Source: Syncephalis fuscata S228
Taxonomy: Eukaryota; Fungi; Zoopagomycota
Direction: 5' to 3'
Assembly: GCA_025786725.1 (NCBI GenBank)
Contig: JAHLTZ010000032.1
Span: 186,001-250,000, forward strand
Length of the DNA: 64,000 bases
Part shown: piece after piece, positions 4,152 to 58,450 of the stretch
Layout of the letters: every line of letters begins with the position of its first letter
Position numbering within the stretch: position 1 is the first letter of the stretch
Notes under the pieces: model-generated
Seen by the model: the letters and a program-made list of their open reading frames with translations, nothing else
Told to the model about the DNA's origin: nothing
Databases searched by the model: none
Program-made: the position numbers and the translations under genes

Positions 4152-4386
4152 AGTAAGATGCAATCAAAGCAGTAAAGTTATAATGCCGATGCTTATAGCT
4201 TGAACAAACAATTTTATGTAATAACCATCATCATCTCTAGCGTAGTATGGATTTTTTGCTTGAAACTTTCATTTACTAAATAATCCCGAGCATTAATACA
4301 GTCTTAATTTGGCTACAACCATTAATAAAATTTAAAACAAAAACCGTATTTTACCTCATAGATTGTAATTAGTCTGGCCAAACGCG

Positions 4387-5085: not shown

Positions 5086-6316
5086 TTATAACATCGTAAA
5101 ATATTTATTATTGTCAAAACATTTATACCTGGGTAATCCCGAAAGACGTCTGGCAGGTGCCTTAGTTCGTCTAAGTGAAGCCAAGTAGCTTGATGGCGAG
5201 GGACGTTGTTCTGGGTTGGGAACCAGCAATGCTTTCATAACATCGATTACTGGCTTCAAAGCAGCATTTATTCCAGCAAAATGTGAAATATGGAATGTCT
5301 GTGGAGGAATTCCAGTGTTAAGTGTATTGGCAATGGATTGTTGTTGATAACCGTCCAAGGGAAACAGGTATTTTCCGGTCATTAAGAAGTACAAAGTTAC
5401 GCCGATAGCCCACGCATCTTTCTTGGTGGGATCCGCTGCAATGTTTTGATAAATCTCGGGCGGTATAAATGGAGGACTTCCACTTTTATTGGTTTCCAAT
5501 GCAATTTTACCATTAGTTACGCTAATGGGAGAAGCAAGGTCAAAATCAATGATCGTGGCTTTTGGCCGTGTTGGATCATTTGGATAAGGGAAGCTGATCA
5601 TCACATTGTCCGGCTTTAAATCATTGTGAATCAATCCGGCGTTATGCATGTAAGCTGCACCTAATAAAATCTGCTTTGCTACATCTTGTAGAAAATCAAC
5701 TCGTTGTTTTAAAAACATAGCCTGAGTGTACTGGCGTGAGTTTGTGGCACCGTCGTAAGAGTACACAAAGCAAAAAGAATCTTTGATTCCAAAATGTATA
5801 TATGGCTCAGAGACATTTTCACGACCAACCGCCCGCATGCCTGTTAGTTGACTTGTTGCCGTATAAAGTATCTAAAAATATTAGTTTAACTACTGTTTAA
5901 TATTTAGTAGTATTAATGCTTACCTGAAAAGCTTTTATTTCTTTATTAATAGCTGAACGGCGGCCTGGTATTTCACGGCCATTAGCACTGTAGGCAACAC
6001 ATTTGACAAATGCATATTTTTCTTTATATTTGCCGAGGGCAATATCCATGCCACTGCCTGCGCCGCCCCCTCCTAGAACTCGAATAATTCTAAGATCAGC
6101 TTTACCGAAAGCACTGGGTCCATTTAGTTTTTGGCCCAAAAAGTTATCGGTTTGAATGCCATCTATATAATAATTAGTCAACTGCAGGCATCATACCGTT
6201 CAACACTTACATGGATCGACTTTCATCCTAAGTGACAAAACAGTGGTAAATGAAGTAACGGAAATAACAGCGCATACCTTCAAGGCAGCAGCTAATAGAC
6301 GCCAGTGCCCATGCAT
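5086..6316 (-). CDS. Secreted Ser/Thr protein kinase, copy 1 (3 exons)
   Basis: Hydrophobic N-terminus MHGHWRLLAAALKVCAVISV; Gly loop LGGGGAGSG, AFVK, HNDLKPDN, DFD, PPE, DAWAIG; GT-AG introns at about 6210-6163 and 5924-5873. The paralog suggests the true stop is near 5123. Confidence 0.88.
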
Positions 6317-6979
6317 ATCAATAGCGTTTGAAGAGTATTCGTGATGGAAATAAGAATCGTGATGGAAATAAGAATCGAAAAGTGTATTGAAGATTTGCAA
6401 AACTAATCACAAAAATGAAATCTTTAAATATGATAATCAAATCAAGATAAAAAATATTGCCACGAGCTAGAACCAAAAGTCCGAATAGTTGCCATGTCTT
6501 AAAATATATACGATATTTCTATATTTAGGATATGTAGATAGTATAAACTTAATATAGACACCACATGCTTGCTTATCTTTAACAAGGTATTAATATTCAC
6601 GTTATTACTATTTCAGCATTATTTATTCAAGCTTAGTCACAATAGTATTAAGTTGGAACTATTATACTGAGAGCACACTATTACCAAGTTTTTAAAACAT
6701 AATTATTGGAATTTAATAAGACAATCGATAGAGGCGGTGAATATGATATAAAAATAATATTTTATTTAATACATAATAGGTGCTGTATTTATGGCGGCAA
6801 ACAAATAAAAAAGATGGGATGCTTGGTGCATTAAGTGGTTAATGATGTAATAGAATTCCTATTGTGTTAAATATCGTAAATCGTGCTACCATCGGGATAT
6901 GTAAATATTTGTATTTGGTAATTAACACATGGTAAATTATGTGTGTGCTTTTGTGACATCTAGCACATAATTCCAATAG

Positions 6980-9280: not shown

Positions 9281-10132
9281 ATGACGGAACAGCATTCTCT
9301 ACCAACATCGGCGGTACTTGGTCTTAAAACGCCCGCTATGGACGTCTCTTTACATAGCACGAATACAGGCCACACGCTTATTAAGGCAATGCACGACCCG
9401 CTGGCCCTCATAGACCAGACCATGGCCGACCACCGCTACTCGTACGGCCTACGAGTCGACCCATACGCAGTAAACAACCCACGAGTAATCCTTCACCGTT
9501 TGAAGCAAGTAATACTCATCATTCATCGCGGGATTATAGCTCTACAAGTCACGCCGTAACTGAATTCGAGTATTCGGTTCATGGCACCAACGGTGCAATG
9601 CATGACGAACTCACCCGAGTATTTCCGTTTGAGCAGTTATCGGCAACGGAACGTGATACACGCCGGTCCAACCTAAAAATCATAATGACCTTTCAACGGT
9701 GCCGTAACGACCTTGTAGGTATTGGACCACAAGTTGAATTGGAGAAAGACGAACGCTTAGAAACCGTAAGCTATAATATAGATACAGCTACATTTTGTTT
9801 ATCTAACTATTTAACACTGCTAGTTCTTTCAAATGGCTGAATATATTCATTATCAATTGAATAGTCGTGGTTACTGGGTCGATTTTACTGATCCTTCATC
9901 AGGCTATCCAGTCTATTCGCCACGCGGCTCTACCTATTTCCCCGATGTCGTAGCTACTGAAATACTATTAGGCTATGACGTATTGTGGACTGGTTGCTGC
10001 AAAGTACTTGTACATCCTCGATGGGATGCCAAAGTTTATCCAGCAAGTCTATTTACTGATGCACCCATTGAAGATATTCAACAAGTCATCGATGATGCTT
10101 GTGGCCATCGATCAACAGCCCATAAAAATTAA
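9281..10132 (+). CDS. MMADHC: Cobalamin trafficking protein CblD (MMADHC-like); apparent 1-nt deletion near 9472
   Basis: EFEYSVH..ELTRVFP, TFQRCRNDLV, GYWVDFTDPSSGYP, GCCKVLVHPRW, YPASLFTDAP; intron 9766-9823. Confidence 0.85.
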
Positions 10133-10258
10133 TTAACTATTCCTAGCCACCTGTAATCTCTACTATTAACATTTTACATCATTAAATAAAAATAGATCAT
10201 TTTTAATACAAAAGGGTCATACAAATAATCAATAATAGCAAAGTAAAAGATAGACTAA

Positions 10259-13200
10259 TTAAAAGGATCGACCTTTACGTAGTGTACGATGACCATCAAC
10301 ACCTTCATCATCGTCATTTGTATCTGATGGATCCATCATTGTATATCGACCGGTTTGTGGATGTAAGAATTGCGATACTGCTGGTGTTGCCACTAATACA
10401 GTCGGTGCTGTAGGACTCGTTGGTTGTCCATGATGATGATGATGATTAATACGGGAACGAGAGGTAATACCGCGAGATTGACCCATGGACGTCAGTGTTA
10501 GTGTAGAGGGTGTAGTACCTTGACGTACAACAGGTGTATGTATAGTCAATGATGTATTGGCTGATGTATTTAGATCATATCCCATATTGATAGCCGGTGG
10601 TGTATGGCCCGGTCTATCTCCAGGTATATATCTTGATATATTCTCTTCACTGCTACTATGATCTTCGTTGTTGCTAATAAATGGACGATAAGCAAATCTA
10701 TCTTCATGACTAGGTGAATAATAGCGGTCATGATACTGCTCACTTGATAAATCCTCTTCATCTTCTTCGTTTAAATGATAAGATGGTTGATTGTGCATCA
10801 ATTCACGTTGAGCCATCGAATGCGTAGTAGCAGCCGATGAAGGTCCCGTTTCAGTCAAATGGATATCAATTGAATAGTTTTCCATTTCCATATCCGTTGA
10901 TAATGCATACTGTGCACCTGTAATACTACCCGATAGACTGTTGGATAGACTGTCATTTAAATGATCGGTATGTACGTCAATTGGATGATCTTCATCATCT
11001 CATCTTCATCTTCATGAATATCTTCAGGTCCATTAAGTGATTCGGCATAATAGACACTGCCTGTACCATGTTGTCCATTAGTAGATTGTTGACTCAATGA
11101 ACTTTGACGTGACAATGATCCATGAGATCTACCCATGGGCGGTACACTTAGTGTATGGGATGATACTGCTGGCGGTGGTTGTAATGCTATAGACGAGATA
11201 TTATGTTGATTTAATGATACAGAAAATGTCGGTGTTCTACTTGGATCAGAGTCTGTAATAGAAGATAGATCAGGTGAATGTGATATGACTGTATTCTTTC
11301 TCCATCGATCATCTAATGATGGATCTTGTGACAAAGATACAGAAGGCAAATTAGAATGACTATTAGACATATCTAACGATTGAGCATAATAACTACTTGT
11401 ATCATCTGTAAATGAGGCTCGTTGTTGTGATGATACAATAGCTGGTGGTGGTGGTGGCTGTTGTTGTTGTTGTTGCTGCTGTATCACTTCATTATGACGT
11501 GTATCTCTGTTATCTGTATTCATAGTATTTCCATGATCAGTATTTGCTTCTAATGCTTTATCTGATTTCTGTCTTCTATGACGCCTATTATCTGGATCTG
11601 GACTCGTCGTTCTTTCCCATTGATTGGTCATTCTTCTAACGATACCCGGTGGAGTGCGTGGTTCTTCATAGGCCATTCTTTGTGTGGCAGGTGATCTACT
11701 ATGACTGCCACTTGGTTCATCTTCATCCAATAATGGTTCACGACGCCAATCTGATTGTAATCGACGTGGTGGTGGATATACCGATGAACCAGTATATTCA
11801 TCTCGATATTGACGATGATTGGAGGTATATGGATCGATTGGAGGGGCTAATGGAGGTGAGAGTGGTGCCGGTGGTTCAGGTAGATTCATATAGGTGAGTG
11901 ACCGTGAATGTCGACGCTGTGCCGCTTCATATCTACTCAACTCTTCATTATAACGTTCAAGTCGACGCATATATTCATCATACGCTCTACGCGACTCCAT
12001 ATATTGATAATAGTCATAGGCCGCCCTATCTTCGTCATGGTCATTATAGGATGCCATGGGTGGATATCGACGTGATGCCATAGTGGGAGATGAAGGCGAA
12101 GAAGCCGTATAATATCCACGTTTATAATAGCCACGGTCATTAGATGATTGACGATGATGTTGCCTATAATATCTTTGTTGATATTCATCTTCTTCGTGAC
12201 GATGATCGTATGGATGACGTCTATCGTCTGATCTACGATGTGATGGTGGAGAGAATCGATAATCATAATCAGGATAATTCGATGAATCCATATCATAACT
12301 AGGTCGAGATGATCGTTTATCTTCAGATCGTTGTCGTCGATGTTGTTGTTGTTGTTGTTGTTGTGTTGGTGGTGGTGGTGACATTTCTGTATTTCTACTA
12401 ATCCTATTGTTATTATTCTCTGGTAATGAAGGTGATCGTGTATGATAACGATGACGATGTGTCGATGTTGATTCAACTGGATAACTGTCATCATTGACGT
12501 CATCTCGTCTGTACGGATCATTAGATGAATTTGTTCTTAATGGTGGTTGACGAGATGAATTGTTATCTGTTTCAGTTAAATGTTCAGGTAATTGAGGTCG
12601 ACGTGTATTTGATTTGCCTTGATCAATACTTTTACGTGAATGTCCATTACTGCCATATTTATTTCTTGATCGAACACTGCCTGTATTAGAGTCATGATGT
12701 TGATGTTTAATATCTTCTTTTCTTCTTACACTGCCACTTGCTATATTATTAATCGATGGTGGTAGAATGGCTGAAGCAGATGATGAATTACGAGTCATTT
12801 TAACCGTATCTTTATCGTCGACGAATGTATTGGCCCGCATTTCTTGTGGTATATAATCATCCAATAGAATAATGTCTGTTTCATGATCATCCTTAACTAA
12901 GCGTTGTCGTCGTTTCATCGAGGTGGGTGGCGGTTCAATAAGCGAGTTTTCAATAGTGACAGCAGTTGTATCGCCGCTATCTTCAATGATTTTGGTCTTT
13001 TGACGATTAGACGTTGACTGACGGCCACCATGATCAACGCTCATTAATCGATGGAATCGACCACTACGTGAATGTTCAAGCATTTGTATTGTTGAATTGG
13101 GCCGACTGAGTATCATGCTGCCTGGGCGGGCCAATTCCATCGATGCGGCAATATCCATGGTGCCACGGACATCGTCGTACTCGTTACGAGGCATGGGTTT

Positions 13201-47441: not shown

Positions 47442-49870
47442 TTACGGCTTTGTTTTGCTACGGATAAACAATTAGATGCAACATAATGGATTTATTATAC
47501 TTACCGTGTTGTTTTCTTTTTGCTCTTTTGACGTTTTCTCTGCCATAATGGCATTGGAGTGGCTGTGATAGCATTATCCCGCATGCTAGAATAAAACTCC
47601 TGAACCTCTTCGTGACAAGTAACGTGTTTTTTATCGAAATTCAACAGCTCCAATCCATCCTATGATGCATATTAGCCATTAATACTATCAATATCAATGA
47701 TACACACCAGAGACCGAACACGACTAAGTGCCACGTATGCTTGACCAGGAGCAAACGCTTGATCAAGAGAAATCTACAATGCTGTATTAGTCGTGCAATG
47801 CTTATTGCTATATTTATTATTTACCTGAACACAATCTAAAGACAATCCTATATTATTACCACGCTATTAATAAAAACACATGTTATAAGTTATACAACAC
47901 ACCTTGACACTATGTCAGTTGCTAATTAGTAAGTAAAATGATTAAATGCTATAGCACTAACCTTGTGAACGGTAAGCGACCAGGCAAGCTTGAGCGGAAT
48001 TTGCTCACGAAAAACAATGGTGCGATTAAGTAGCTCTACTTCGTGTATAATAGGATAGATAGCACATTCTTGTCCATTAGCAAAACGAACCACCGGAAAG
48101 CGGCGATTGTCCATATTCCAATGCGGGCTCCAAGTTTGTAGATGACGACTTTTCGTCGTGCGCATAATACGCAGCATCTTTCGATGTACATCTCTTTCCG
48201 GCACAAAACGAGTAATTACCCCACGACTGCCGTTAACTAGACCTCGGGCCAGTGATAAATTGGCTAGATGCCAAATGGTTATTATTTAAGTATAGGTATG
48301 CACCATTTGATTATTCTTACTTAACAGCATCACTTGAGCACCGACTTTAAGCTCTAAACAGCTTTCTAATCGAACATCTTTAAGTCCATATTCAACTATT
48401 TGATCTGGTAAGCTATTGGGACCATCAACGGCATCGTAGACAAATGTAGGGCCGGTAGCTTATTGAATAAACTGCGATTTTCATCTGCCACTTGAGCGCG
48501 CGTAACGTGCAATTTAGTAGGCTATAAATCATATTAACACATCAAAACAAAAAAAACAGCTACAAGCTTACTAATACGCCTAAAAATGAGTTCGTTCGTG
48601 TGGCAAGTGGCACACGACATTGATCAAGTAGTTTCATTGCTTTCGATGTCACATTGCCTTTACGAATTTCATTGAGAATTGATACAAAATCTGCGTCAGT
48701 TTGACGAAACACCGTCTGTAATTCAATACAGGCCAATTCGGCTGCCTTCCAAGCGGCCGATTGAAAAGCAAGAATTTCCATTTTATGACCGCAATCTCCA
48801 CAAGTCACTGATGAAACGCCCGATTTTTTATCACTCGCCTGTAAACGAGTACCGCAAGCTGAACAATCTATAAAACGTGTCACTATACAAGCATTAACAT
48901 TTCATTATAAATGATAAAAGTGCCAATTATATTTACCTGGAGGCAATTGAAAGAAATCGCCACAGAACAAAAGCTGAATACCACCAAATGGCAAGGCTGA
49001 TTTTTTAATATGCTGAGCTATTCTGTCCAACTTATCAAGCATGTCTGCTCGCACCATACTAATTTCGTCAATAATCAATACTTCAGTCTTCTTCCATCGT
49101 CGAACTGCTTTTTTATTCGTCAATGTGTGCTCTAGCAATGCCTCTGTACTGCCATCAGCGAGTCCTACACCGGCAAATGAATGCAATGTTTGTCCACCAA
49201 TATGAACTGCCGCAACACCTAATTATTTATTAGATAATAATTACTGTTTCATTTCATCTTACCAGTGGATGCTGTAATAGCAACATTTTTACCAGTCAGT
49301 TGTAATCGCTTAATTATACTTTTAAGTAGAAATGTTTTACCAACACCAGCTGATCCAGTAAAAAATACATTTCTACCTGCCAATGCTTGATCTATAACAT
49401 ATTTTTGCTCTTTTGATAATAATTGGTCTTCTTCAGCAATTTTTTGACGTAAATCTTCTTCCCATTCCTGTGTGTCTTTTCGTTGACTTTTGTCGCGATT
49501 CCAAACAATAACACCATAGTCTTGGCTATCCCTTTTATCACTTGACTGTTCTATTTGTCATTACTGGTTAATATTAACTTGAATAATGATATTCAGCTAA
49601 TGGTGACGTATGACATTATTATTAACACTTACCCATACATTCCACTTGTTGCATCGAGTTTATAGCAATTTGCTTTTCTTGCTGCCTATAAATACTTGGT
49701 CCAACTACCGAGGATTGCTCTGCAGGCAGTGCATTTCTGTATGGAACGGCGGTTGACAAACTGACTCGTCCTAGAATACGAATGGGTTGTCGGCTAGACT
49801 GGCCGAAAGGTAGAGCAAGCGTTAAGCGTTTATCCGCCAAAAGCGCCCGACGGAATAGCGCTAATTTCAT
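47442..49870 (-). CDS. PIF1: Pif1-family DNA helicase, probably mitochondrial; apparent 1-nt deletion near 48455
   Basis: FTGSAGVGKT, LHSFAGVG, IIDEISM, PFGGIQ..GDFFQLPP, VFRQ, GAQVMLL, LVNGSRG, QIPLKLAWSLTVHKCQGLSLD, GQAYVALSR; Arg-rich presequence MKLALFRR. Confidence 0.93.
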
Positions 49871-50032
49871 TTTTATATTCAATTAAGGACCATAAATTCT
49901 ACGAGTATTAGAAGTGTTGCAAGCTAGATTACAAGGAATTAGATTTGTAAGGTCAATAACAGAAATTGCCAATAAAAAGTATGGAAAAGTTTGTTATAAT
50001 TTGATGAATTAAATCAATTGACGTTGAATTTA

Positions 50033-50313
50033 GGGAGGCGTGTGGCCTAAACGGTCTTTAAAGTAGGAAAATGTTTTCGCTAGTTCGAATTTGTTTCAGG
50101 AAATGCGTGATGGATCCTTCCGTAGAAGAATGGTCGATATTCCAACACGTGAGGAGACCAACGGTTTCAGTTGTAGATGGCAGGTTCTGCGTTGCGCGGA
50201 TATTCGAATGAACGTCTATTCTCCTAGGGTGGCAGACAATGCTGCAAATGCGCGTTAGGTCCACGGACCGTTGTCTCACTTAAGCTAATAAATTCAAATT
50301 CAAATTCAAATTC
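50033..50313 (+). mobile_element. tRNA-derived SINE-like retroposon with 22-bp target-site duplication
   Basis: Identical flanks AAATCAATTGACGTTGAATTTA at 50011-50032 and 50314-50335; 5' GG start, A-box-like TGGCCTAAACGG, B-box-like GTTCGAAT; 3' tail (AAATTC)4. Confidence 0.85.
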
Positions 50314-50883
50314 AAATCAATTGACGTTGAATTTATTTCAGCTTTATATCTCCGCGCTTATCATAATAAAAATGATATCATCTTTCGTTGTGCCTTTTTT
50401 ATTAGATATAATCATACTAAGTAAATTTAACATTAATAAAACATGCGAAGTAATAGATACGCACAAGAAAGCATAAGTACTACCTGCTTACAATGCTAAC
50501 GAATAAACTGATTGTTAACCGCGCTAAACGTGTCTTATTATCTTTGTCATCTTCTATATATTGACGGCACATTGCCACACCGTACAATAATGATTGTTAA
50601 AATGAACAGTGTCAATGTGGTTGTATTAAATGTAACTAACTACAATATTTTTATTTTTTTATTTGATTAATAAACTAAATAAGATATATAATACCATATT
50701 GTTACTATTCTACTTAGATTAAAACAATAAACATATTATTAACACTCACTAGTCTTGAATGATCTGTAGTAAAGCTTATTAGTATGCTATAATACTTAAA
50801 CATATCAATGGTAATTAAAACATGACAAGTTACGCATATGATTGTACACGAATCAGCACACAATTACAACAAATAATTATACT

Positions 50884-52413
50884 TTATAAATAAAGTCCTA
50901 AGACTCCAAAAACAAAAACAAAAACAGCCACTAAATTAAACGTTTTATAGGCAGGATTTGCCATGGATACTTGATGGCTTGCAGTGATATTAGATGCTGC
51001 TTTGGCTGTTGTATCAAAATCTTCTACATCACTGGCATCATTGGCCGCTAATACACGCCAATAAACTGCCATACCTGCCATCATATGATCATCTACATGG
51101 CAATGAAACAGCCATTTGCCAGGGACATCCGGTACCATATCAACAGTGTGAAATGAGCCCGGCAATAGATCAACGGTATCCTCACGTGCACCGTGTTCAA
51201 CCATAGTAACGCCGTGGAAATGGGCCGTATGCAAATCCATCATTGAGCCAAACTGTATAGTTGAAATAAATATTAATTAAAGATGTAAGATTAGTTATGT
51301 TCCTACCGTAGCTAAATACCAGCGTACACGCTCGCCCACACGTGTCACCAAACCATCTAGATTGCCGTATACGCGTCCATTAATGGCGTGCATCATATTG
51401 CTTTCCATGAACTTGGGATCGGTTAAATCGTAGATTGTGGCATTCTGTGCCTCCCCTGGTACCGGTAAATTAGTTCTATTATGAGCAAATTGTGCAATAT
51501 TCTGCCGTATGTAAGGAGAATGATTTTCATCGCCTATAATAAACATTGTCACATATTCCCGGTCAAATTCGCGCTCTTCTGATGTAGGTGGTGGACCAGA
51601 AGAAGCAACGCCGCCTACTTCTGGTCCACTTCCAGGCAGCAGGCCACGACGATAAATAATAATAGGCCCTACAAGACCTGCGCAAAGATCTGATAGTTCA
51701 TTGACATGCGAGTGATATCCCCATAGAATTGAGCCACGATCGCGCTGTGCAGGACCAGCACGTGCTGGCACTTCCCAGGTATATAGAAAGCGTCCACCTG
51801 GTGCTACATAGCCACCTCGCCCGCCACCCGAATACCAGGCACCCTCCGAGTCCAGCTGGTAGAGTACGCCATGTGGATGAATTGAGTAAGGGTGGCTAGC
51901 ACGATTCCAAAACCATACGCGAATAATATCGCCAACTTCTGCGCGAATAGTCGGTCCTATATTTCCTTGCCATTCTGGACGTGGCAAACGTTTTGTAAAG
52001 CTTGAATCTGTGTAGCCGTAATAAAGCGCCTTGCGATATTTATGTCCAATACGGCCCGGACCATTTACGGTTAATATACGCGCGGATTCCGAATCCTCCA
52101 AGCGAAGACCGCGGATACGATCCTCGTTGCTGGGTGCATAGTCCCACACTGTCTCCTCAGCTGTAATGTAGTAGTTGCGAATAGTACAGCTACTTGGCGA
52201 AGTAACACATCTGGGTGGCAAGTCGGTTGTAATAAAAGCGCCAGGATTGTCTACACTGAGACCATTCGCTCCAGCTACGGAAGGAATAGTGTGCTGTGGT
52301 ATAACTGGGTCAAGTGCAACAACAACGCACGAATTCAGCCACCATTGAAGGCTTCTATTTAGTGCAAACCAGGTGCAGTAGACGAATAGGACGTTTAGGA
52401 TAGTATGCTTCAT
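50884..52413 (-). CDS. Two-domain ceruloplasmin/hephaestin-like multicopper oxidase, subunit A (complete T1/T2/T3 ligand set)
   Basis: Signal peptide; YYITAEE..WDYAP; GPTIRAEVGD; SIHPHG; YHSH; FMESNMMHAING; DLHTAHFHG; WLFHCHVDDHMMAGM; C-terminal hydrophobic anchor; one intron. Confidence 0.92.
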
Positions 52414-52608
52414 TGTTTAAACAAACAAACAATGAAGATCGATAATAGAAAAGGGTATACTTAAATTATCCATAACGGAGTTTGAACAGGCCTTATTTGC
52501 TGCAGTTCTAAAACGCGAATAGAACCGTTTAAAGTTCCGATCGTCAATAAATTGCGCTCCTTTACAATACGCCGCTTAATTTATTTTACTAGATTATTTA
52601 CAATTCAA

Positions 52609-54385
52609 ATGTTTACGCGCCAGTTCGTTTTAAATACTATCCAACTATGGCAGTTGTGCACAAGTGCCTTTGTTGGAGCTACGCCTTCGCTTTATGGTCA
52701 TGAATCGCCTATTCAGCTAAGAGCTTTAGACAAAACGGCCACAACTTTGGTCGACAGCTGTCAGCCGCCGAGTTGTACTGTGCGTCGATATTACATTGCA
52801 GCCGAGGAAATACTATGGGACTATGCGCCTTCTGGACAGGATATGATTCAAAATAGAATATTTCCTGATATTGTTGCGGCGTATGTATTGATTATTTGAT
52901 AACAATTAAGGCTTATTTAAACAGCACTTATTAGATTAAAGCAGATTGAACGACGCACCTACAAGAAAGCAGTTTATCGTGGCTATGAAGATGCTACATT
53001 TAAGAAAAGAACACCACGAGAAGAGGTAAATAATTAGTATTTATTACTTGTTTAATTAAAACGCGTCGTTTAGTGGCTAGGTATTCTTGGCCCAACTATT
53101 CGGGCTGAAGTAGGCGATGTCATTGAAGTAAGTTGCATATCAATTGTTGGTTTAATTTAACTTGAGCTTGATTAGATTTTATTTCGTAATATGGCCAAAG
53201 AGGCGTATTCTATCCATCCGCATGGCGTTTTCTATACACCTGAAAACGAAGGTGCTTTATATGTAGATGCTACAGAAGGTGCAGGAGTACGGCCTGGCCA
53301 AACATTTACTTACCAGTGGAAAGTGCCTGGTAATTAGCGAATAGATAGAATATTAAAGTAAATTTTAACATTCAACATTTGCAATAAATAGAGCGAGCAG
53401 GACCCGCTTCTGATGACCCAGGATCTATTCTATGGCTTTATCATTCACATCATAATGAGGTTAAAGACGTAAATGCTGGTTTAACAGGTTCAATTGTAAT
53501 TTACCGAAGAGGGTGGCTGCAATCAACTGAAGAAGCGCCGAGTGTACTTAATGCAACTGCTGCCCAACTGGACAAGATAAAACAGTCGCCATGGATAGCA
53601 CCTGCACCTACCTATCCTGACATATCCCCAGACACTTATCCACGAGCATCTACACGTTACTATGCGCGTGATACTGATCGAGAGTTTATTATCTGGCTTG
53701 ATATTCTTAATGAAAACAATACACCTTACTATTTCGAAAATATGCAACTGGTGCAAGAAGGTGCGCTTATACCACAGGATGGCAGTGCAGATGCCGATGC
53801 TCCTGGCATTGACATCAACCAACTAAGACGCCACCAATTCTTTGCCATTAACGGCCGTATTTTTGGCAATCTTGCTGGCCTAGTAGCACAGAAAGGTGAA
53901 CGCGTACGCTGGCACTTGGCTGCTCTAGGAACAGAAGATGCACTGCATCATATTCAATGGAGTGGGCCGGCTAGCGCCGTTACTGAACGCGGCTACCGGA
54001 AGAATGGCGCCTCATTATTGCCGGCCTCTTTTCACACTGTAGACTCGTATATGGATATAACCGGTCGCTGGTTCTTTGAGTGCCAAACAAGCGAACACTT
54101 TCTACGAGGCATGTCTGCTTGGTATGAAGTTATAGCACGCTCAGCAAATACTAAAGATGAACAAACACCCAATGCAACTGGCATCGTTAATAATTTGACA
54201 TCGATACAAGATCAATTTGTATTAGATGCCAAAATCGATGCTGCTATTCAGAGTGGCAATTGGAACGCTATGACTACCCCACTGGCCGTTCCTTCGCTTC
54301 CTTCAATGAGTACAGCCTCCTGGATTATGTTGATAGGCGTGGCTATTTGTTGGGTTTTTGGTATTACTCAAATAATTTATTCTAA
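52609..54385 (+). CDS. Two-domain ceruloplasmin/hephaestin-like protein, subunit B (T1 only in domain 2); stop position assumes a 1-nt deletion in the T run near 54358, otherwise 54512
   Basis: Signal peptide; YYIAAEE..WDYAP; WLGILGPTIRAEVGD; SIHPHG; YHSH; domain 2 LGTEDALHHIQWSG and FECQTSEHFLRGM; C-terminal hydrophobic segment; 4 introns. Confidence 0.88.
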
Positions 54386-55459
54386 TAGTTGCATCTGTAA
54401 TATTGGTATATATGAAATTCTATGGCTATTGTTTTATATTTATTATTTTATAATAAATTATTATATTAATATCGACTTTTATTATATTATGTTTAATTAT
54501 TTAATATACTAACTATTTACTAACAACTCGTTTTATAATAATAAGTAGTTTTGATGTCAAATGACATCATTATTATTAATTTGTGTATAACAACACAACA
54601 TACAATCTACGTCATCACACCTTCCCTTCTTTTTCTTCGCGCTTTATAGTATTTATTTAGTGCATATATTACTACGCACTATATATGCTACTTAAATAGT
54701 AACAATAATTGATTGATTACTAGTTAAGTTCTAACACTTTTTATACTATGTACTTGCATTACTCTTTTATAATCTAACCTTTTTTAAAAATCACTTTCTT
54801 CACTTCGATCGTTGATATTAGCAACCTTATTGGCATAGTAAGTGCATTTTTAATTTTGTTTTATATTATGCTTTTTACTAAGTATTTATAATGTATATTT
54901 CAAAAGCTTTTCTACAATCATCATTAAATAGCTGATTGTTTTATTCAATTGCTTGGTAATAATGTCGAGAACTAGCATCAATCTGTTGTTTGTGCAACTA
55001 TATCTGTCAGATAATAAATTCTTAATCTTTGTTATAAATTATTTGTATTTTGTTTAACTGCTATGCTTGTGGGTATTGTGTCGTATACTTTTAGAAGCAA
55101 AACTTATTTATTAGCTATTATAAACCATGGTATCATTGTATTACTTTTTGCTATTAACATATATATATATATATATGTATAAATGTCAGCGGCTATATCA
55201 CCTGTTAACAAGTAATATAGTTATTATAGATGTGGTCGTTGTATTATTTATATATACACAAATTACCACTGTATGACACTATGGCTATTGTTTTTGTATT
55301 TATTTTCTTTATATTAGTAAATAATTTGAATTATGCTAATTGCCAACAATTAATTCTTGGTGTTTTGATTTTTCTTTTTTTCTTCTTCACGACCTTTTGT
55401 TTTGCCTCTTTTACTATTATTGCTATAGCTTTTTGGAATCTGCTTAGCCGATGGTTAAC

Positions 55460-57281
55460 ATGTCGGCAGATCCCAGCTCAAATGAGACGGCATTTGCTAA
55501 GAAATTAGCTTCTAATGGTAAGCTACTATTATTTTGTTGAATTTGTTAATAAATACTAACATTATTGTTTACAGACAAGAAAGAACGCGATCGAGCCGTA
55601 AAGTCACTTCGCAAATATTTGACACACCGTCGCGAGACAGAAGAAGTAGAGCTACTTAAACTATGGAAAGGCATATTTTATTGTATGTACAGACGGCTCA
55701 TTAGATAGTTTACTAATGAAAATAACCACGACTAGGCATGTGGATGTCGGACAAACCGTTAATACAGCAGCAGCTATGCGATGATCTGGCTGGCCTGGTG
55801 AAGTTCCTGCCCGTTGAGCGCATTATGCCTTGGTTAAGCGCCTTCTGGACTACAATGTGCCGGGAATGGTCAGGGGTTGATAAGCATCGGTAATAACACA
55901 CGGTACTGTATCAAATAACAAGGACCATTAATTAATCGGTAATCCTTTAGAGTTGATAAGTTCTATTTACTTATGCGTCGATATGTAAACTCCAGTTTCC
56001 AGGTTCTTCAATCGAATCAATGGGAACCGTCCTTGGTGAGTGCCTACTCGGAACTATTAGTTAGTGGTCCACTTGGGTAAGTGAATAGCCAGTACTAGAA
56101 TACACATAATAACTATTAACAATTTATACATTATTATAGTCCCTACGACGATACAGTTCCCTGTGCCATTCAATTGCATATTTCAGATATCTATATTGAT
56201 GAATTGGAAAAATTAGTTAATGCTGAGGTATTATTTTGCTTAATTGCTACCTTTCTATTCGTTGTACTAAGGCTATTTATAGGAAATGGCCATTATTCCA
56301 ACTGCTACACTCCTTACACCATTTTGCCTATTAATGGCTCATTCACGTGTAACTGGTGTATGCTCACGCATACGTGAAAATGTTTTTATCAAAGTAATAG
56401 AACACACAACACGAGGCAAGTCAATACAGGCCTTGAAAATAACCATAACATATTTATTATCAGTTTAACAGATATATACACAACTGAAGAGGAAGAGGAT
56501 GGAGAGAAACCAGAACCACTACCATATGACTTGTTAGGATTGAGTGATATCTTGTTTGAAGTTGGCTCCGACTCCAGTGTAAATGCTGCAGGTAGAAAAC
56601 GAGTATATAAGTTATCCAGCACTTTGAAAGAAACAGCAAATACAATTATCAATTCTATGGGCGATGAAGACGACGTTATGGATGAAGTAGAAGTAGAGAA
56701 AGAAGAAGAAGAAGAAGAAGAAGAAGAAGAAGAAGAAAATGAAAACGATGATGAAAACGATGAAAATGAAGATGAAAATGGCAATATTGAAAATGATATT
56801 ATGGATGTTGAAGTAGATGAACAGTCTGAAAGTGAAGAAGATAAATTAACAATAGTACAAGCAGTACAGGTATATAGATAATATTTGATAAAATATAGAT
56901 AAAATGCTTATTAATGATTAGACCACAAGTATTGTAACAAGATCGGCTACGAATAAACAAAAGAACATGACGGTAAATCAGAAAACTACGTCAATTAAAA
57001 AGAAGGTTGTATGGAATTTAAAGGCTGGTACAGTCAAAAGTAAGTAATTATGTCCATACATTATGATATGTAATTAATGTTACTTATTTAATCTAGGCTT
57101 CCGCAAAAGAGTCCCAATTGCTTTTATGCCAGCACCTATTGTGCCCAGACCACCAGGCAAAAGTGTTCTTAAACGACGCCCCAACGACATACCACAAGCA
57201 CCTGCCAATGGTATTGATAACGACGAACAACTACAACTGGGGAAACGTAAACGAGGCAAGGCCAAACGAAAGACGAAATAA
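55460..57281 (+). CDS. RRP1: Pre-60S rRNA processing protein Rrp1/Nop52
   Basis: [58 protein letters not shown]; acidic tract; includes a GC-AG intron. Confidence 0.93.
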
Positions 57282-57557
57282 ATATATGATCATTGTTTAC
57301 AATAATACCAATAGTAATAAAAAATACTATTAATAATAATGTATAATAATGTATAACAGTAATTAAATAATTAGTATATTATACAATCACACAAAAACTG
57401 TGTCTGAATGTGTGTGTGTGTGTGTGTGGCGAGTGCATCAATCACACCCACTCACCCACATCATCCACGAGTTGGTTCCTCCTCCTTTCCACTATTGATT
57501 CCCAGACGCATCTCGTATCGCTCGGGATACATATCCGTCTGCAGATAAATCATCGAT

Positions 57558-58450
57558 ATGACTCAGCCGGTTCGGTAAGTAGGAATACAACATACGGTTA
57601 TTGATGGGACGAATAGAACGGTATAAGATGGATGGAATTATATATATATACATGGATACATATGCCTAGGTCATAGAATGAAATACAGATGGATGGATGT
57701 ATACATCGATTGAGGTCATTGCTACGTGTGTATATCAATCTATATTCATCTGGTTAGATATCATTTATTTGATAAGATAGATAGATAGATAGATGGATGG
57801 ATGGATGGATGGATGGATCTTGTAGAGATAGACGAATATACGTGTAGACGAGCAGATGGATAAGTCGCTGATAACTTGTTCAATATGACTATTATTATTA
57901 TCATCCGTATTACAACTAGCACTATAATACTAGTGCATAATAAGCCTAATAATAGGCATAATAGCGGTTGTAGCCATAGAAGCCATAGTGAATTCAGTCA
58001 TAGTATTACTAGACTTGCTAACCAATATTACTATTGATTCGATATTATAGTCTTTACTGCAAAGGCCGCATTCAAGGCTTCAAGCGCGGTAAGCGCAACC
58101 AGAGCCCAGATACCACGCTTGTGCGCATCGAGAACGTGCAATGCAAAGAGGATGCTACCTTCTACTTGGGTAAGCGCATAGCCTATGTCTACCGCGCCCA
58201 AAAGGAAACCAATGGCTCCAAGTTCCGCGTTGTTTGGGGTCGTGTTATGCGTGTCCACGGTAACAGTGGTATCGTCAAGGCCAAGTTCCGTACCAACTTG
58301 CCAGCCAAGACTTTCGGTGCCAGCGTCCGTGTGGTAAGTAATAGTTACAATAATAATAGTAATAGTTGTTATTTTATATTACGTTACTAATTATGGTTTT
58401 ACTATTTAATTTTACTTTTTATTTAGATGTTGTACCCATCCAACATCTAA
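57558..58450 (+). CDS. RPL33: 60S ribosomal protein eL33 (L35a)
   Basis: MTQPVR|[46 protein letters not shown]|MLYPSNI*; introns 57575-58050 and 58334-58426. Confidence 0.97.
57777..57817. repeat. (GATA)n(GATG)n microsatellite in RPL33 intron 1
   Basis: Read directly. Confidence 0.9.

What the first reader, a model, noticed from the sequence alone, without database searches (positions are those of the whole stretch)
50884..54385. Head-to-head pair of two-domain ceruloplasmin-like genes with complementary metal ligands: a possible split ferroxidase
Seen: two divergent genes with start codons about 195 bp apart (52413 and 52609). Each has a signal peptide, only two ceruloplasmin-type cupredoxin domains and a C-terminal hydrophobic anchor. 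Domain 2 of A looks like ceruloplasmin domain 6 (LHTAHFHG, HCHVDDHMMAGM, and the Fe-site pattern ESNMMHAING). Domain 2 of B looks like domain 2/4: T1 His/Cys/His/Met are kept (EDALH, ECQTSEHFLRGM) but the trinuclear HxH ligands are lost. Established: ceruloplasmin's domain-6 labile Fe site uses E935, H940 and D1025 plus E272 from domain 2, four residues before the T1 His; six-domain MCOs are thought to derive from trimers of two-domain MCOs. Seen: A has the E/H/D equivalents but Met at the E272 position (GSMMDLH). B has exactly that Glu (GTEDALH) and lacks its own E/H. Inference: A and B co-assemble, probably as a trimer, into a surface ferroxidase resembling the proposed precursor of ceruloplasmin/hephaestin and unlike three-domain fungal Fet3/laccase.
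Basis: partly seen in the sequence, partly recalled or inferred. Interest (0 to 1): 0.88.

Follow-up and report, generated by a model that had tools for sequence, protein, structure and literature searches.

The report
Paired complementary two-domain ceruloplasmin-like oxidase genes
Two neighbouring fungal genes encode half-size relatives of the blood copper enzyme ceruloplasmin, and each keeps the metal-binding residues the other has lost, so they probably work only as a mixed complex; similar complementary pairs also turned up in soil bacteria.

Summary
The window is Syncephalis fuscata, a zoopagalean mycoparasite. Gene A (50884-52413, minus strand, 1 intron, 491 aa) and gene B (52609-54400 or 54512, plus strand, 4 introns, about 514 aa) start 195 bp apart. 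Each is a two-domain ceruloplasmin-like multicopper oxidase, and they are the only such hits in the genome.

- **Gene A** keeps all copper ligands and the equivalents of ceruloplasmin E935, H940 and D1025. It has Met at the position of the Glu supplied by a neighbouring domain (E272/E971).
- **Gene B** keeps the four domain-1 cluster His, its type-1 site and that Glu. It has lost the domain-2 cluster His and the E/H pair.

New evidence:
- The B pattern holds in five zoopagalean loci, and the head-to-head layout in four.
- B is under purifying selection (dN/dS about 0.10).
- Among 195 two-domain homologues, E+H and the Glu go together. The only three exceptions are A orthologues.
- In ceruloplasmin, one unit supplies both the domain-1 His and the Glu to domain 6. 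This matches what B has kept.
- Acidobacteriota carry overlapping tandem pairs with reciprocal ligand loss, found independently.

Co-assembly is well supported but unproven. Ferroxidase activity, stoichiometry and expression were not tested. A and B are fungal paralogues, so they parallel ceruloplasmin's evolution and are not its ancestors.

The parts
50884..51252 (-). Gene A exon 2 (residues 370-491 plus stop). It holds most of domain 2: M373 (51241-51243) at the ceruloplasmin E971/E272 position, T1 His H377, cluster His H380/H382, H419-C420-H421, D424, H425 and M430. It ends in a C-terminal hydrophobic tail.
51253..51306 (-). Gene A intron (54 nt, GT..AG, phase 0).
   Evidence: The spliced product equals P0001.
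51307..52413 (-). Gene A exon 1 (residues 1-369). It holds the hydrophobic N-terminus, a Cys pair, domain 1 with H179/H181 and H234/H236, the linker, and the start of domain 2 with E337 (51403-51405) and H342 (51388-51390).
52414..52608 (.). The 195-bp spacer between the two start codons, presumably a shared divergent promoter. A GATA element lies about 27 bp from A's ATG, and a similar one is present in two other Syncephalis spacers. No longer motif is conserved.
52609..52880 (+). Gene B exon 1: hydrophobic N-terminus, Cys pair, start of domain 1.
52935..53025 (+). Gene B exon 2.
53074..53127 (+). Gene B exon 3.
53176..53329 (+). Gene B exon 4, with domain-1 cluster His H153 (53215-53217) and H155 (53221-53223).
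53392..54512 (+). Gene B exon 5. It holds H208/H210, a long B-specific interdomain linker and domain 2. Key residues are R336/F341 (no E/H), E372 (53934-53936, the Glu four residues before T1 His H376), Q379/S381, E420-C421-Q422, E425, H426 and M431. A hydrophobic anchor follows. The NCBI model leaves this frame at 54353 and stops at 54400; the unspliced frame stops at 54512.

Best explanation
A and B are paralogous two-domain ceruloplasmin-like multicopper oxidases. I propose that they are secreted, anchored in the membrane by C-terminal hydrophobic segments, and assembled into a mixed ring (most simply a trimer) like the pseudo-trimer of ceruloplasmin.

A plays the part of ceruloplasmin's D5-D6 unit. 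Its domain 2 carries the type-1 copper, four of the eight cluster histidines and three iron-site residues (E337, H342, D424).

B sits next in the ring and plays the part of D1-D2. Its domain 1 gives the other four histidines, completing the trinuclear cluster with A's domain 2. Its domain 2 gives Glu372, which completes A's substrate site and links it to A's type-1 histidine. B's own domain 2 keeps only a type-1 copper, as ceruloplasmin domains 2 and 4 do.

**Shown:** the gene models, the fold, the residue equivalences, their conservation, the linkage, and selection on B.

**Inferred:** co-assembly, ring order, stoichiometry (A2B would use every conserved feature), Fe(II) as the substrate, and surface location.
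For: 1. Residue mapping to 1kcw.
2. All five B-type genes keep the four domain-1 His, the Glu and the type-1 ligands. All have lost the domain-2 cluster His and the E/H pair. The five are S. fuscata, S. plumigaleata, contig L017, Thamnocephalis and Piptocephalis gene 2. B cannot build a cluster with itself, so conserved domain-1 His make sense only beside an A-type domain 2.
3. B exon 5 has dN/dS 0.10 at dS 0.73, against 0.07-0.09 for A.
4. Of 195 two-domain homologues, 106 have E+H together with the Glu, 74 lack both, and only 3 have E+H without the Glu. Those three are the A orthologues.
5. In ceruloplasmin the D6 iron site is E935/H940/D1025 plus E272 from D2, and E272 is hydrogen-bonded to the type-1 ligand H1026 (PMC3738974). 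D1 belongs to the same unit as D2 and supplies the cluster His.
6. The head-to-head pair is kept in S. plumigaleata, Thamnocephalis and contig L017, even though both flanks are rearranged between two Syncephalis species.
7. An independent parallel exists in Acidobacteriota. Overlapping tandem genes show reciprocal loss: gene 1 has domain 1 intact and domain 2 degenerate, and gene 2 is the reverse.
8. A and B are the only multicopper-oxidase hits in the 29.4-Mb genome.
Against: - There is no direct evidence of interaction or co-expression.
- A has all eight cluster His and could be a self-sufficient homotrimeric oxidase.
- In Piptocephalis the A-type gene keeps its own Glu, and the two genes are 3.6 kb apart and convergent. 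B therefore existed before A needed it.
- The covariation count is one evolutionary event on each side, so it is not 195 independent observations.
- One A orthologue has Gln at the E935 position (P0002).
- The D1025-position residue in B varies (E/L/D), and ten homologues without E+H, the three B orthologues among them, also have the Glu.
- No FTR1 or ferroportin was found, so there is no obvious partner for a ferroxidase.
Confidence: 0.55

Rival explanations
1. A alone is the enzyme, as a homotrimeric two-domain oxidase. B is a non-catalytic paralogue with a separate job: a type-1 copper protein acting as an electron carrier, a copper store or sensor, or a surface or structural protein. The adjacency simply reflects tandem duplication.
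For: A has the full ligand set. Known two-domain oxidases are homotrimers (PDB hits; PMC11761707). In Piptocephalis the A-type gene is fully self-sufficient and not head-to-head with B. B has a long stem branch (0.39 + 0.79) and a B-specific linker, which fits a new function.
Against: This reading does not explain why B keeps all four domain-1 cluster His and the Glu in five lineages under dN/dS 0.10 while losing their partners in its own domain 2. It does not explain why the only E+H proteins without the Glu sit beside B. The bacterial reciprocal pairs show that paralogues of this family do become interdependent.
Confidence: 0.25
2. Whatever the assembly, the substrate is not Fe(II). The pair would oxidise Cu(I), Mn(II), phenols or amines, and the E/H/D/E site is a general cation or substrate site.
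For: No FTR1 or ferroportin was found in the genome. JGI labels bacterial homologues variously as 'hephaestin' or 'manganese oxidase'. A has Met pairs around the site (ESNMMH, GSMMDLH, DHMMAGM), which recalls the Met-rich sites of cuprous oxidases (my own knowledge). One A orthologue has Gln for E935. Ceruloplasmin itself oxidises amines (PMC3738974).
Against: The E/H/D triad is identical to the ceruloplasmin iron sites and is kept in four of five A orthologues. Its tight covariation with the Glu across the family indicates one conserved four-residue site. The Met pairs are not conserved in the Thamnocephalis or S. pseudoplumigaleata A proteins.
Confidence: 0.3
3. B is a decaying duplicate with no function.
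For: B has lost four catalytic His and the E/H pair. It evolves faster than A (64% against 77-78% amino-acid identity between Syncephalis species).
Against: B keeps an intact reading frame with conserved introns in five lineages spanning three genera. Its dN/dS is 0.10. Its type-1 site, domain-1 His, Glu and anchor are all conserved.
Confidence: 0.03

Closest known systems
Vertebrate ceruloplasmin / hephaestin (six-domain ferroxidases; PDB 1KCW, 4ENZ, 2J5W)
   Same: They are the best sequence and fold match. Each two-domain unit aligns over its full length at about 38-47% identity. The same type-1 and cluster motifs and the same E/H/D plus trans-Glu iron site are present. As in ceruloplasmin, there are units with a type-1 copper but no cluster ligands (B against D2/D4), and S. 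plumigaleata B even has Leu in place of the axial Met, as in D2.
   Different: Here the units are separate polypeptides from two genes, not one six-domain chain. A and B belong to a fungal clade distinct from the animal units, so B's degeneration is convergent. A keeps domain-1 His, which ceruloplasmin D3 has lost entirely and D5 only in part.
Homotrimeric two-domain multicopper oxidases (SLAC and other small laccases, e.g. 3CG8; Nitrosomonas 3G5W; Nmar_1354)
   Same: Two cupredoxin domains, type-1 copper in domain 2, and trinuclear clusters built between domain 1 of one chain and domain 2 of the next.
   Different: They are only distantly related (E about 1e-13, 15-19% identity in fold alignments). 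All known examples come from one gene. The 'heterotrimer' of Nmar_1354 is a proteolytic variant of a single chain. None has a partner lacking half the ligands.
Two-domain ceruloplasmin homologue FOYG_17127 of Fusarium oxysporum and its bacterial/archaeal relatives (Zhang et al. 2020, PMC6994591)
   Same: A two-domain ceruloplasmin-like protein in a fungus, modelled as a trimer on 1KCW.
   Different: It is a single gene on a lineage-specific chromosome, ascribed to horizontal transfer and modelled as a homotrimer. No complementary paralogue was described. I did not compare its sequence here.
Fungal Fet3p/Ftr1p high-affinity iron uptake
   Same: A surface-anchored copper ferroxidase. In many fungi it is also encoded head-to-head with its partner gene (my own knowledge).
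   Different: Fet3p is a three-domain laccase-type oxidase whose partner is a permease. No Fet3-type oxidase or FTR1 hit exists in this genome. Here the divergent partner is a second oxidase subunit.
Tandem reciprocal two-domain oxidase pairs in Acidobacteriota (found here, loci L020-L033, L049)
   Same: Two adjacent paralogues of the same family. One has domain 1 intact and a domain 2 with type-1 copper only, like B.
   Different: The loss is fully reciprocal, because gene 2 has lost its domain-1 His. The genes overlap by 4 bp in one operon. They belong to a subfamily without the ceruloplasmin E/H/Glu site, and they arose independently.

Membership tests
Multicopper oxidase superfamily | Cupredoxin domains matching Cu-oxidase Pfam families | tested here: met
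   PF07732 and PF07731 are found in both A and B, exon by exon. They are also precomputed on P0001 and P0019.
Multicopper oxidase superfamily | Type-1 copper ligands His, Cys, His and an axial Met | tested here: met
   A has H377/C420/H425/M430. B has H376/C421/H426/M431.
Multicopper oxidase superfamily | Eight His of the trinuclear cluster (HxH, HxH, HxxHxH, HCH) | tested here: not met
   A meets this with all eight. B has only the four domain-1 His; Q379, S381, E420 and Q422 replace the rest. B alone is therefore not a complete oxidase.
Two-domain multicopper oxidase, type-1 copper in domain 2 ('type B') | Exactly two cupredoxin domains per chain, with no type-1 Cys in domain 1 | tested here: met
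   AF2 models show two beta-sandwich domains. The domain-1 motif is HSH and not HCH.
Two-domain multicopper oxidase, type-1 copper in domain 2 ('type B') | Trimeric ring with clusters at the subunit interfaces | not testable with these tools
   No multimer prediction and no coordinates were available. The ring is inferred from homology to the ceruloplasmin pseudo-trimer.
Ceruloplasmin/hephaestin-type ferroxidase | Six cupredoxin domains in one chain | tested here: not met
   The chains are 491 and about 514 aa with two domains each.
Ceruloplasmin/hephaestin-type ferroxidase | Iron site of Glu, His and Asp in the type-1 domain, plus a Glu from a neighbouring even-numbered domain | tested here: inconclusive
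   A has E337/H342/D424 but Met373 at the Glu position. B has Glu372 but R336/F341. The site is complete only if A and B are neighbours.
Ceruloplasmin/hephaestin-type ferroxidase | Fe(II) oxidase activity | not testable with these tools
   This needs an enzyme assay.
Fet3/laccase-type three-domain oxidase | Three cupredoxin domains with the cluster between domains 1 and 3 of one chain | tested here: not met
   There are two domains only, and the best matches are ceruloplasmin and factor V/VIII rather than laccases.

The most novel reading that the evidence does not exclude
Two-domain multicopper oxidases can exist as obligate hetero-oligomers encoded by adjacent paralogues that have split the catalytic ligands between them. 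This would have arisen at least twice: in zoopagalean fungi (A/B) and in Acidobacteriota (tandem reciprocal pairs). These would be living examples of the 'differentiated trimer' stage long postulated between homotrimeric two-domain oxidases and single-chain ceruloplasmin. They would show that the units specialised before, and independently of, gene fusion.
Probability: 0.45. Interest if true: 0.85.

Novelty: new variant of a known kind. Interest (0 to 1): 0.75.

Why it matters
Ceruloplasmin, hephaestin and clotting factors V and VIII are thought to descend from a trimer of two-domain copper oxidases. No natural enzyme has been described in which the three positions of such a trimer are filled by different, specialised subunits.

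This fungal pair, and the bacterial pairs found alongside it, are concrete and clonable candidates for that missing stage. They make several things directly testable:
- whether the cluster and the substrate site can be shared between different polypeptides;
- how dependence between duplicated subunits ratchets up. Piptocephalis has a self-sufficient A plus B, whereas Syncephalis and Thamnocephalis have an A that lacks the Glu.

The pair also appears to be the only multicopper oxidase in a mycoparasite that seems to lack the usual fungal Fet3/Ftr1 iron-uptake system. That raises the question of how these obligate parasites handle iron and copper.

Tried and rejected
- **Conserved promoter motifs.** No k-mer of 8 or more bases is shared by the four orthologous spacers. 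Only a GATA element near A's ATG recurs in the three Syncephalis spacers, and I found no Fep1, Mac1 or Aft1 consensus worth claiming.
- **Exhaustive search with B**. It found only the known B orthologues (P0121, P0249) among multi-unit animal proteins, and no further B-type lineages.
- **Endogone P0101.** This gene has partly degenerate ligands, but no partner oxidase lies on its 8.3-kb contig.
- **Fungal genes as sister to animal ceruloplasmin.** The tree is an unrooted three-way split of animals, fungi and prokaryotes, so neither vertical descent nor ancient transfer can be chosen.
- **B as orthologue of ceruloplasmin D1-D2 or D3-D4.** Rejected: B lies inside the fungal clade, and its domain 2 scores best against D6.
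Rejected because it is out of frame.
- **dN/dS between S. fuscata and other species.** Synonymous sites are saturated. I used the closer pair, S. plumigaleata against contig L017, instead.
- **Literature.** Searches for heteromeric two-domain oxidases or zoopagalean ferroxidases found nothing relevant.
- **Spliced models.** They were never typed or sent to a search tool. Searches used single exons by reference or the database proteins P0001 and P0019. Exons were joined only inside scripts, to check the frame and map codons. For the tree, Piptocephalis gene 2 and the L017 B gene were each represented by one exon only.
Full report
**1. What is in the sequence**

The window is eukaryotic DNA of about 37% G+C. 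The translated exon 1 of gene A is 100% identical to a 491-aa protein annotated 'Cupredoxin [Syncephalis fuscata]'. Gene B is a 514-aa protein on the same 312-kb contig. The organism is therefore a zoopagalean mycoparasite.

- Gene A lies on the minus strand: exon 1 52413..51307, a 54-nt GT-AG intron, exon 2 51252..50884.
- Gene B lies on the plus strand and has five exons: 52609-52880, 52935-53025, 53074-53127, 53176-53329 and 53392 onward. All introns are GT-AG and in frame.
The NCBI model removes a 35-nt 'intron' after 54353 and stops at 54400. The unspliced frame runs to 54512, and its first residues after the hydrophobic segment match the C-terminal tails of the S. plumigaleata, L017 and Thamnocephalis orthologues. 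I therefore doubt the short intron.

Spliced models were never typed or sent to a search tool. I used single exons by reference and the database proteins P0001 and P0019. Exons were joined only inside scripts, to check the frame and map codons.

**2. Family and fold**

- Pfam finds Cu-oxidase_3 and Cu-oxidase_2 in both genes.
- Against the PDB, A exon 1 hits ceruloplasmin at E 7e-141, with all three two-domain units aligning end to end. Factors V and VIII come next, and Streptomyces two-domain laccases reach only 1e-13.
- AF2 models built with an 82-row alignment give pLDDT 83.1 (A) and 80.3 (B). Each shows two beta-sandwich domains, a disordered linker and terminal helices.
- Foldseek ranks ceruloplasmin first for both models.

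**3. Residue equivalences**

The 1kcw chain uses mature ceruloplasmin numbering.

| Ceruloplasmin position | Gene A | Gene B |
|---|---|---|
| E935 | E337 | R336 |
| H940 | H342 | F341 |
| D1025 | D424 | E425 |
| E971/E272 (Glu, four residues before the type-1 His) | M373 | E372 |
| Type-1 ligands | H377/C420/H425/M430 | H376/C421/H426/M431 |
| Domain-1 cluster His | H179, H181, H234, H236 | H153, H155, H208, H210 |
| Domain-2 cluster His (H978, H980, H1020, H1022) | H380, H382, H419, H421 | Q379, S381, E420, Q422 |

A review confirms the two iron sites. The domain-6 site is E272 (from domain 2) with E935, H940 and D1025. The domain-4 site is E597, H602 and D684 with E971 (from domain 6). E272 is hydrogen-bonded to the type-1 ligand H1026 (PMC3738974).

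**4. Ring logic**

This step is an inference from the ceruloplasmin structure. Ceruloplasmin's trinuclear cluster lies between D1 and D6, and the D6 iron site is completed by D2. D1 and D2 form one two-domain unit. The unit that follows D5-D6 in the ring therefore supplies both the four domain-1 His and the Glu.

B has kept exactly these two things, plus a type-1 copper as in D2 and D4. It has lost everything that would be used at its own domain-2 interface.

An A2B ring would use every conserved feature of both proteins. An AB2 ring would leave A's conserved domain-1 His idle. The stoichiometry cannot be decided here.

**5. Conservation**

B-type genes exist in five places:
- S. fuscata;
- S. 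plumigaleata (P0122, locus L003);
- a Syncephalis-like metagenome contig (L017);
- Thamnocephalis sphaerospora (P0121, locus L001);
- Piptocephalis tieghemiana (L015, gene 2, 10893..9387).

All five keep HPH and HSH in domain 1, the Glu, and the type-1 His/Cys/His with Met or Leu. All five have lost the first His of the domain-2 HxH, both His flanking the Cys, and the E/H pair.

At the Glu position, A-type genes have M (S. fuscata), I (S. pseudoplumigaleata), M (S. plumigaleata) and Q (Thamnocephalis). The Piptocephalis A-type gene P0013 still has Glu there.

The head-to-head layout is present in S. fuscata, S. plumigaleata, L017 and Thamnocephalis. In Piptocephalis the two genes are 3.6 kb apart and convergent, with an aldehyde dehydrogenase gene between them.

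Between S. fuscata and S. plumigaleata both flanks of the cassette are rearranged. PIF1 and the Nop52-RPL35Ae block change sides, while A and B stay together. This is weak evidence, because the spacer is a small target for a breakpoint.

B exon 5 has dN/dS 0.10 at dS 0.73 between S. plumigaleata and L017. A has 0.07-0.09. B is therefore not decaying.

**6. Phylogeny**

The tree has 56 rows and 362 columns and was built with IQ-TREE under LG+C20.
- The fungal two-domain genes form a clade (99/93). It includes chytrids, Ramicandelaber and Endogone.
- Inside it, an A group has support 98/93 and contains A orthologues, Piptocephalis P0013 and a third Thamnocephalis paralogue, P0008.
- A B group that includes Piptocephalis gene 2 has support 97/94.
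- The animal units form their own clade (99/96), and the prokaryotes form another (90/93).

The duplication therefore dates to the zoopagalean ancestor or earlier. B has a long stem. B's likeness to ceruloplasmin D2/D4 is parallel evolution and not ancestry. The three-way split is unrooted, so I cannot say whether the fungal genes are vertical or anciently transferred.

Rows left out or represented only in part:
- S. plumigaleata A and L017 A were omitted.
- Piptocephalis gene 2 and L017 B are each represented by one exon.
- Vertebrate D5-D6 units are missing, because the proteins retrieved at that point were truncated; only the arthropod HEPHL1 unit (Hephl_scorp_ub) may be one.

**7. Family-wide covariation**

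I aligned 195 two-domain homologues, mostly prokaryotic proteins of about 380 aa at 45-49% identity.
- All 195 keep the four domain-1 His.
- 106 have E+H together with the Glu.
- 74 lack a complete E+H pair and also lack the Glu.
- 12 have the Glu without a complete E+H pair. These include the three B orthologues.
- Only 3 have E+H without the Glu. They are exactly the A orthologues of S. fuscata, S. pseudoplumigaleata and Thamnocephalis.

The rows are related, so this is not a probability. It does show that the four residues behave as one module, and that the only place in this sample where the module is split is between these adjacent genes.

**8. An independent bacterial parallel**

I followed the few bacterial members with degenerate domain-2 ligands (P0213, P0157). 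Each is followed by a second two-domain oxidase gene that overlaps it by 4 bp.

A scan of species-representative genomes returned at least 13 acidobacterial loci with both genes intact (Vicinamibacterales and relatives; L021-L033), and a frameshifted copy in L049.
- Gene 1 has HPH and HSH intact in domain 1. In domain 2 it has H-x-(L/R/E) and (H/R)-C-Q.
- Gene 2 has lost two to four of the domain-1 His, while its domain-2 HWHG and HCH are intact.

Only the interface between gene 2's domain 2 and gene 1's domain 1 can hold a cluster. These proteins must therefore be hetero-oligomers with a single cluster, like ceruloplasmin. This shows that paralogues in this family do become mutually dependent, and it raises my confidence in the fungal case.

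**9. Physiological context**

In the 29.4-Mb genome only this locus matches multicopper-oxidase models or protein A. No FTR1 was found. Ferroportin was not found either, but that control was silent. Three NRAMP loci and ferric-reductase-family genes are present.

These six-frame searches ignore introns, so absence is not proven. If it is real, the usual Fet3/Ftr1 route is missing and the role of a surface ferroxidase is open. The substrate itself is uncertain: one A orthologue has Gln for E935 (P0002), and S. fuscata A has Met pairs around the site.

**10. Prior knowledge**

Two-domain ceruloplasmin homologues have been reported in a few ascomycetes. They were treated as horizontally acquired single genes and modelled as homotrimers (PMC6994591).

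Searches for heteromeric two-domain oxidases or zoopagalean ferroxidases found nothing. The '{alpha}{alpha}{alpha}' heterotrimer' of Nmar_1354 is a proteolytic form of one chain. The scan's own notes hold nothing on this.

**11. Verdict**

Co-assembly with B completing A's cluster and substrate site is the best explanation (0.55).
- The main rival is a self-sufficient A homotrimer with B doing something else (0.25).
- Iron as the substrate is plausible but unproven.
- The pair is a new variant of a known kind, and a parallel to the ancestor of ceruloplasmin rather than a relic of it.
- No RNA evidence could be obtained, and no multimer model could be run.

Noticed in passing
L021-L033, L049 (also L020); e.g. 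L024:3971-5227 and 5218-6600: Acidobacteriota (Vicinamibacterales and relatives) carry overlapping tandem pairs of two-domain oxidase genes with reciprocal loss of trinuclear-cluster His. Gene 1 keeps domain 1 and loses domain 2. Gene 2 loses domain 1 and keeps domain 2. This implies obligate hetero-oligomers with a single cluster, and I found no report of it in the literature searches.
   Followed up: partly
alignment of 195 homologues: Across the two-domain ceruloplasmin-like family, the E935/H940 equivalents and the Glu four residues before the type-1 His occur together (106 with all, 74 with neither a complete E+H pair nor the Glu). This suggests that many prokaryotic homotrimers carry three complete ceruloplasmin-type cation sites.
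   Followed up: partly
whole genome G000: The S. fuscata assembly gives no hit to FTR1 or to any Fet3/laccase-type oxidase. It has three NRAMP loci and ferric-reductase-family genes. The classical fungal reductive iron-uptake pair may be absent in this mycoparasite.
   Followed up: partly
window 54354-54512: The annotated 35-nt last intron of gene B is doubtful. The unspliced frame continues with residues homologous to the orthologues' tails (a hydrophobic segment, then a short Cys-containing tail). It then runs about 37 codons further through AT-rich sequence to a stop at 54510-54512, as if the ancestral stop had been lost.
   Followed up: partly
window 47500-58340 versus L003:738-10203: Between S. 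fuscata and S. plumigaleata the PIF1 gene and the Nop52-RPL35Ae block have swapped sides of the A-B cassette, and the latter block is inverted. A and B stay head-to-head.
   Followed up: partly
window 52436-52446; L003 about 5603-5612; L017 about 4170-4180: A GATA element (ATCGATAATAG, TTGATAGTAG or ACGATAATAAG) lies 20-27 bp upstream of gene A's start codon in all three Syncephalis-type spacers. It may be a site for a GATA factor, possibly an iron-responsive one. Nothing else is conserved.
   Followed up: no
P0008 (Thamnocephalis, separate 18-kb contig): Thamnocephalis has a third paralogue in the A group. It has all copper ligands but Trp at the H940 position, Phe at the Glu position and Ser at the D1025 position, so it probably has a different substrate.
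   Followed up: no
L017:4199-5311 (P0002): The A orthologue on this metagenome contig has Gln instead of Glu at the E935 position (QSNTMH). The iron-site triad is therefore not invariant even among close Syncephalis relatives. Its exon 2 lies beyond the end of the contig.
   Followed up: no
L019:3349-4985 (Endogone P0101): A single Endogone two-domain gene has partly degenerate ligands (HTVVFHG, HCG, Arg at the H940 position). No second oxidase gene lies on its 8.3-kb contig.
   Followed up: partly
window 51070-51405 (gene A domain 2): S. fuscata A has Met pairs at three places around the putative substrate site (ESNMMH, GSMMDLH, DHMMAGM), where the family consensus has L, EV and I-x. They are only partly shared by other A orthologues.
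   Followed up: no
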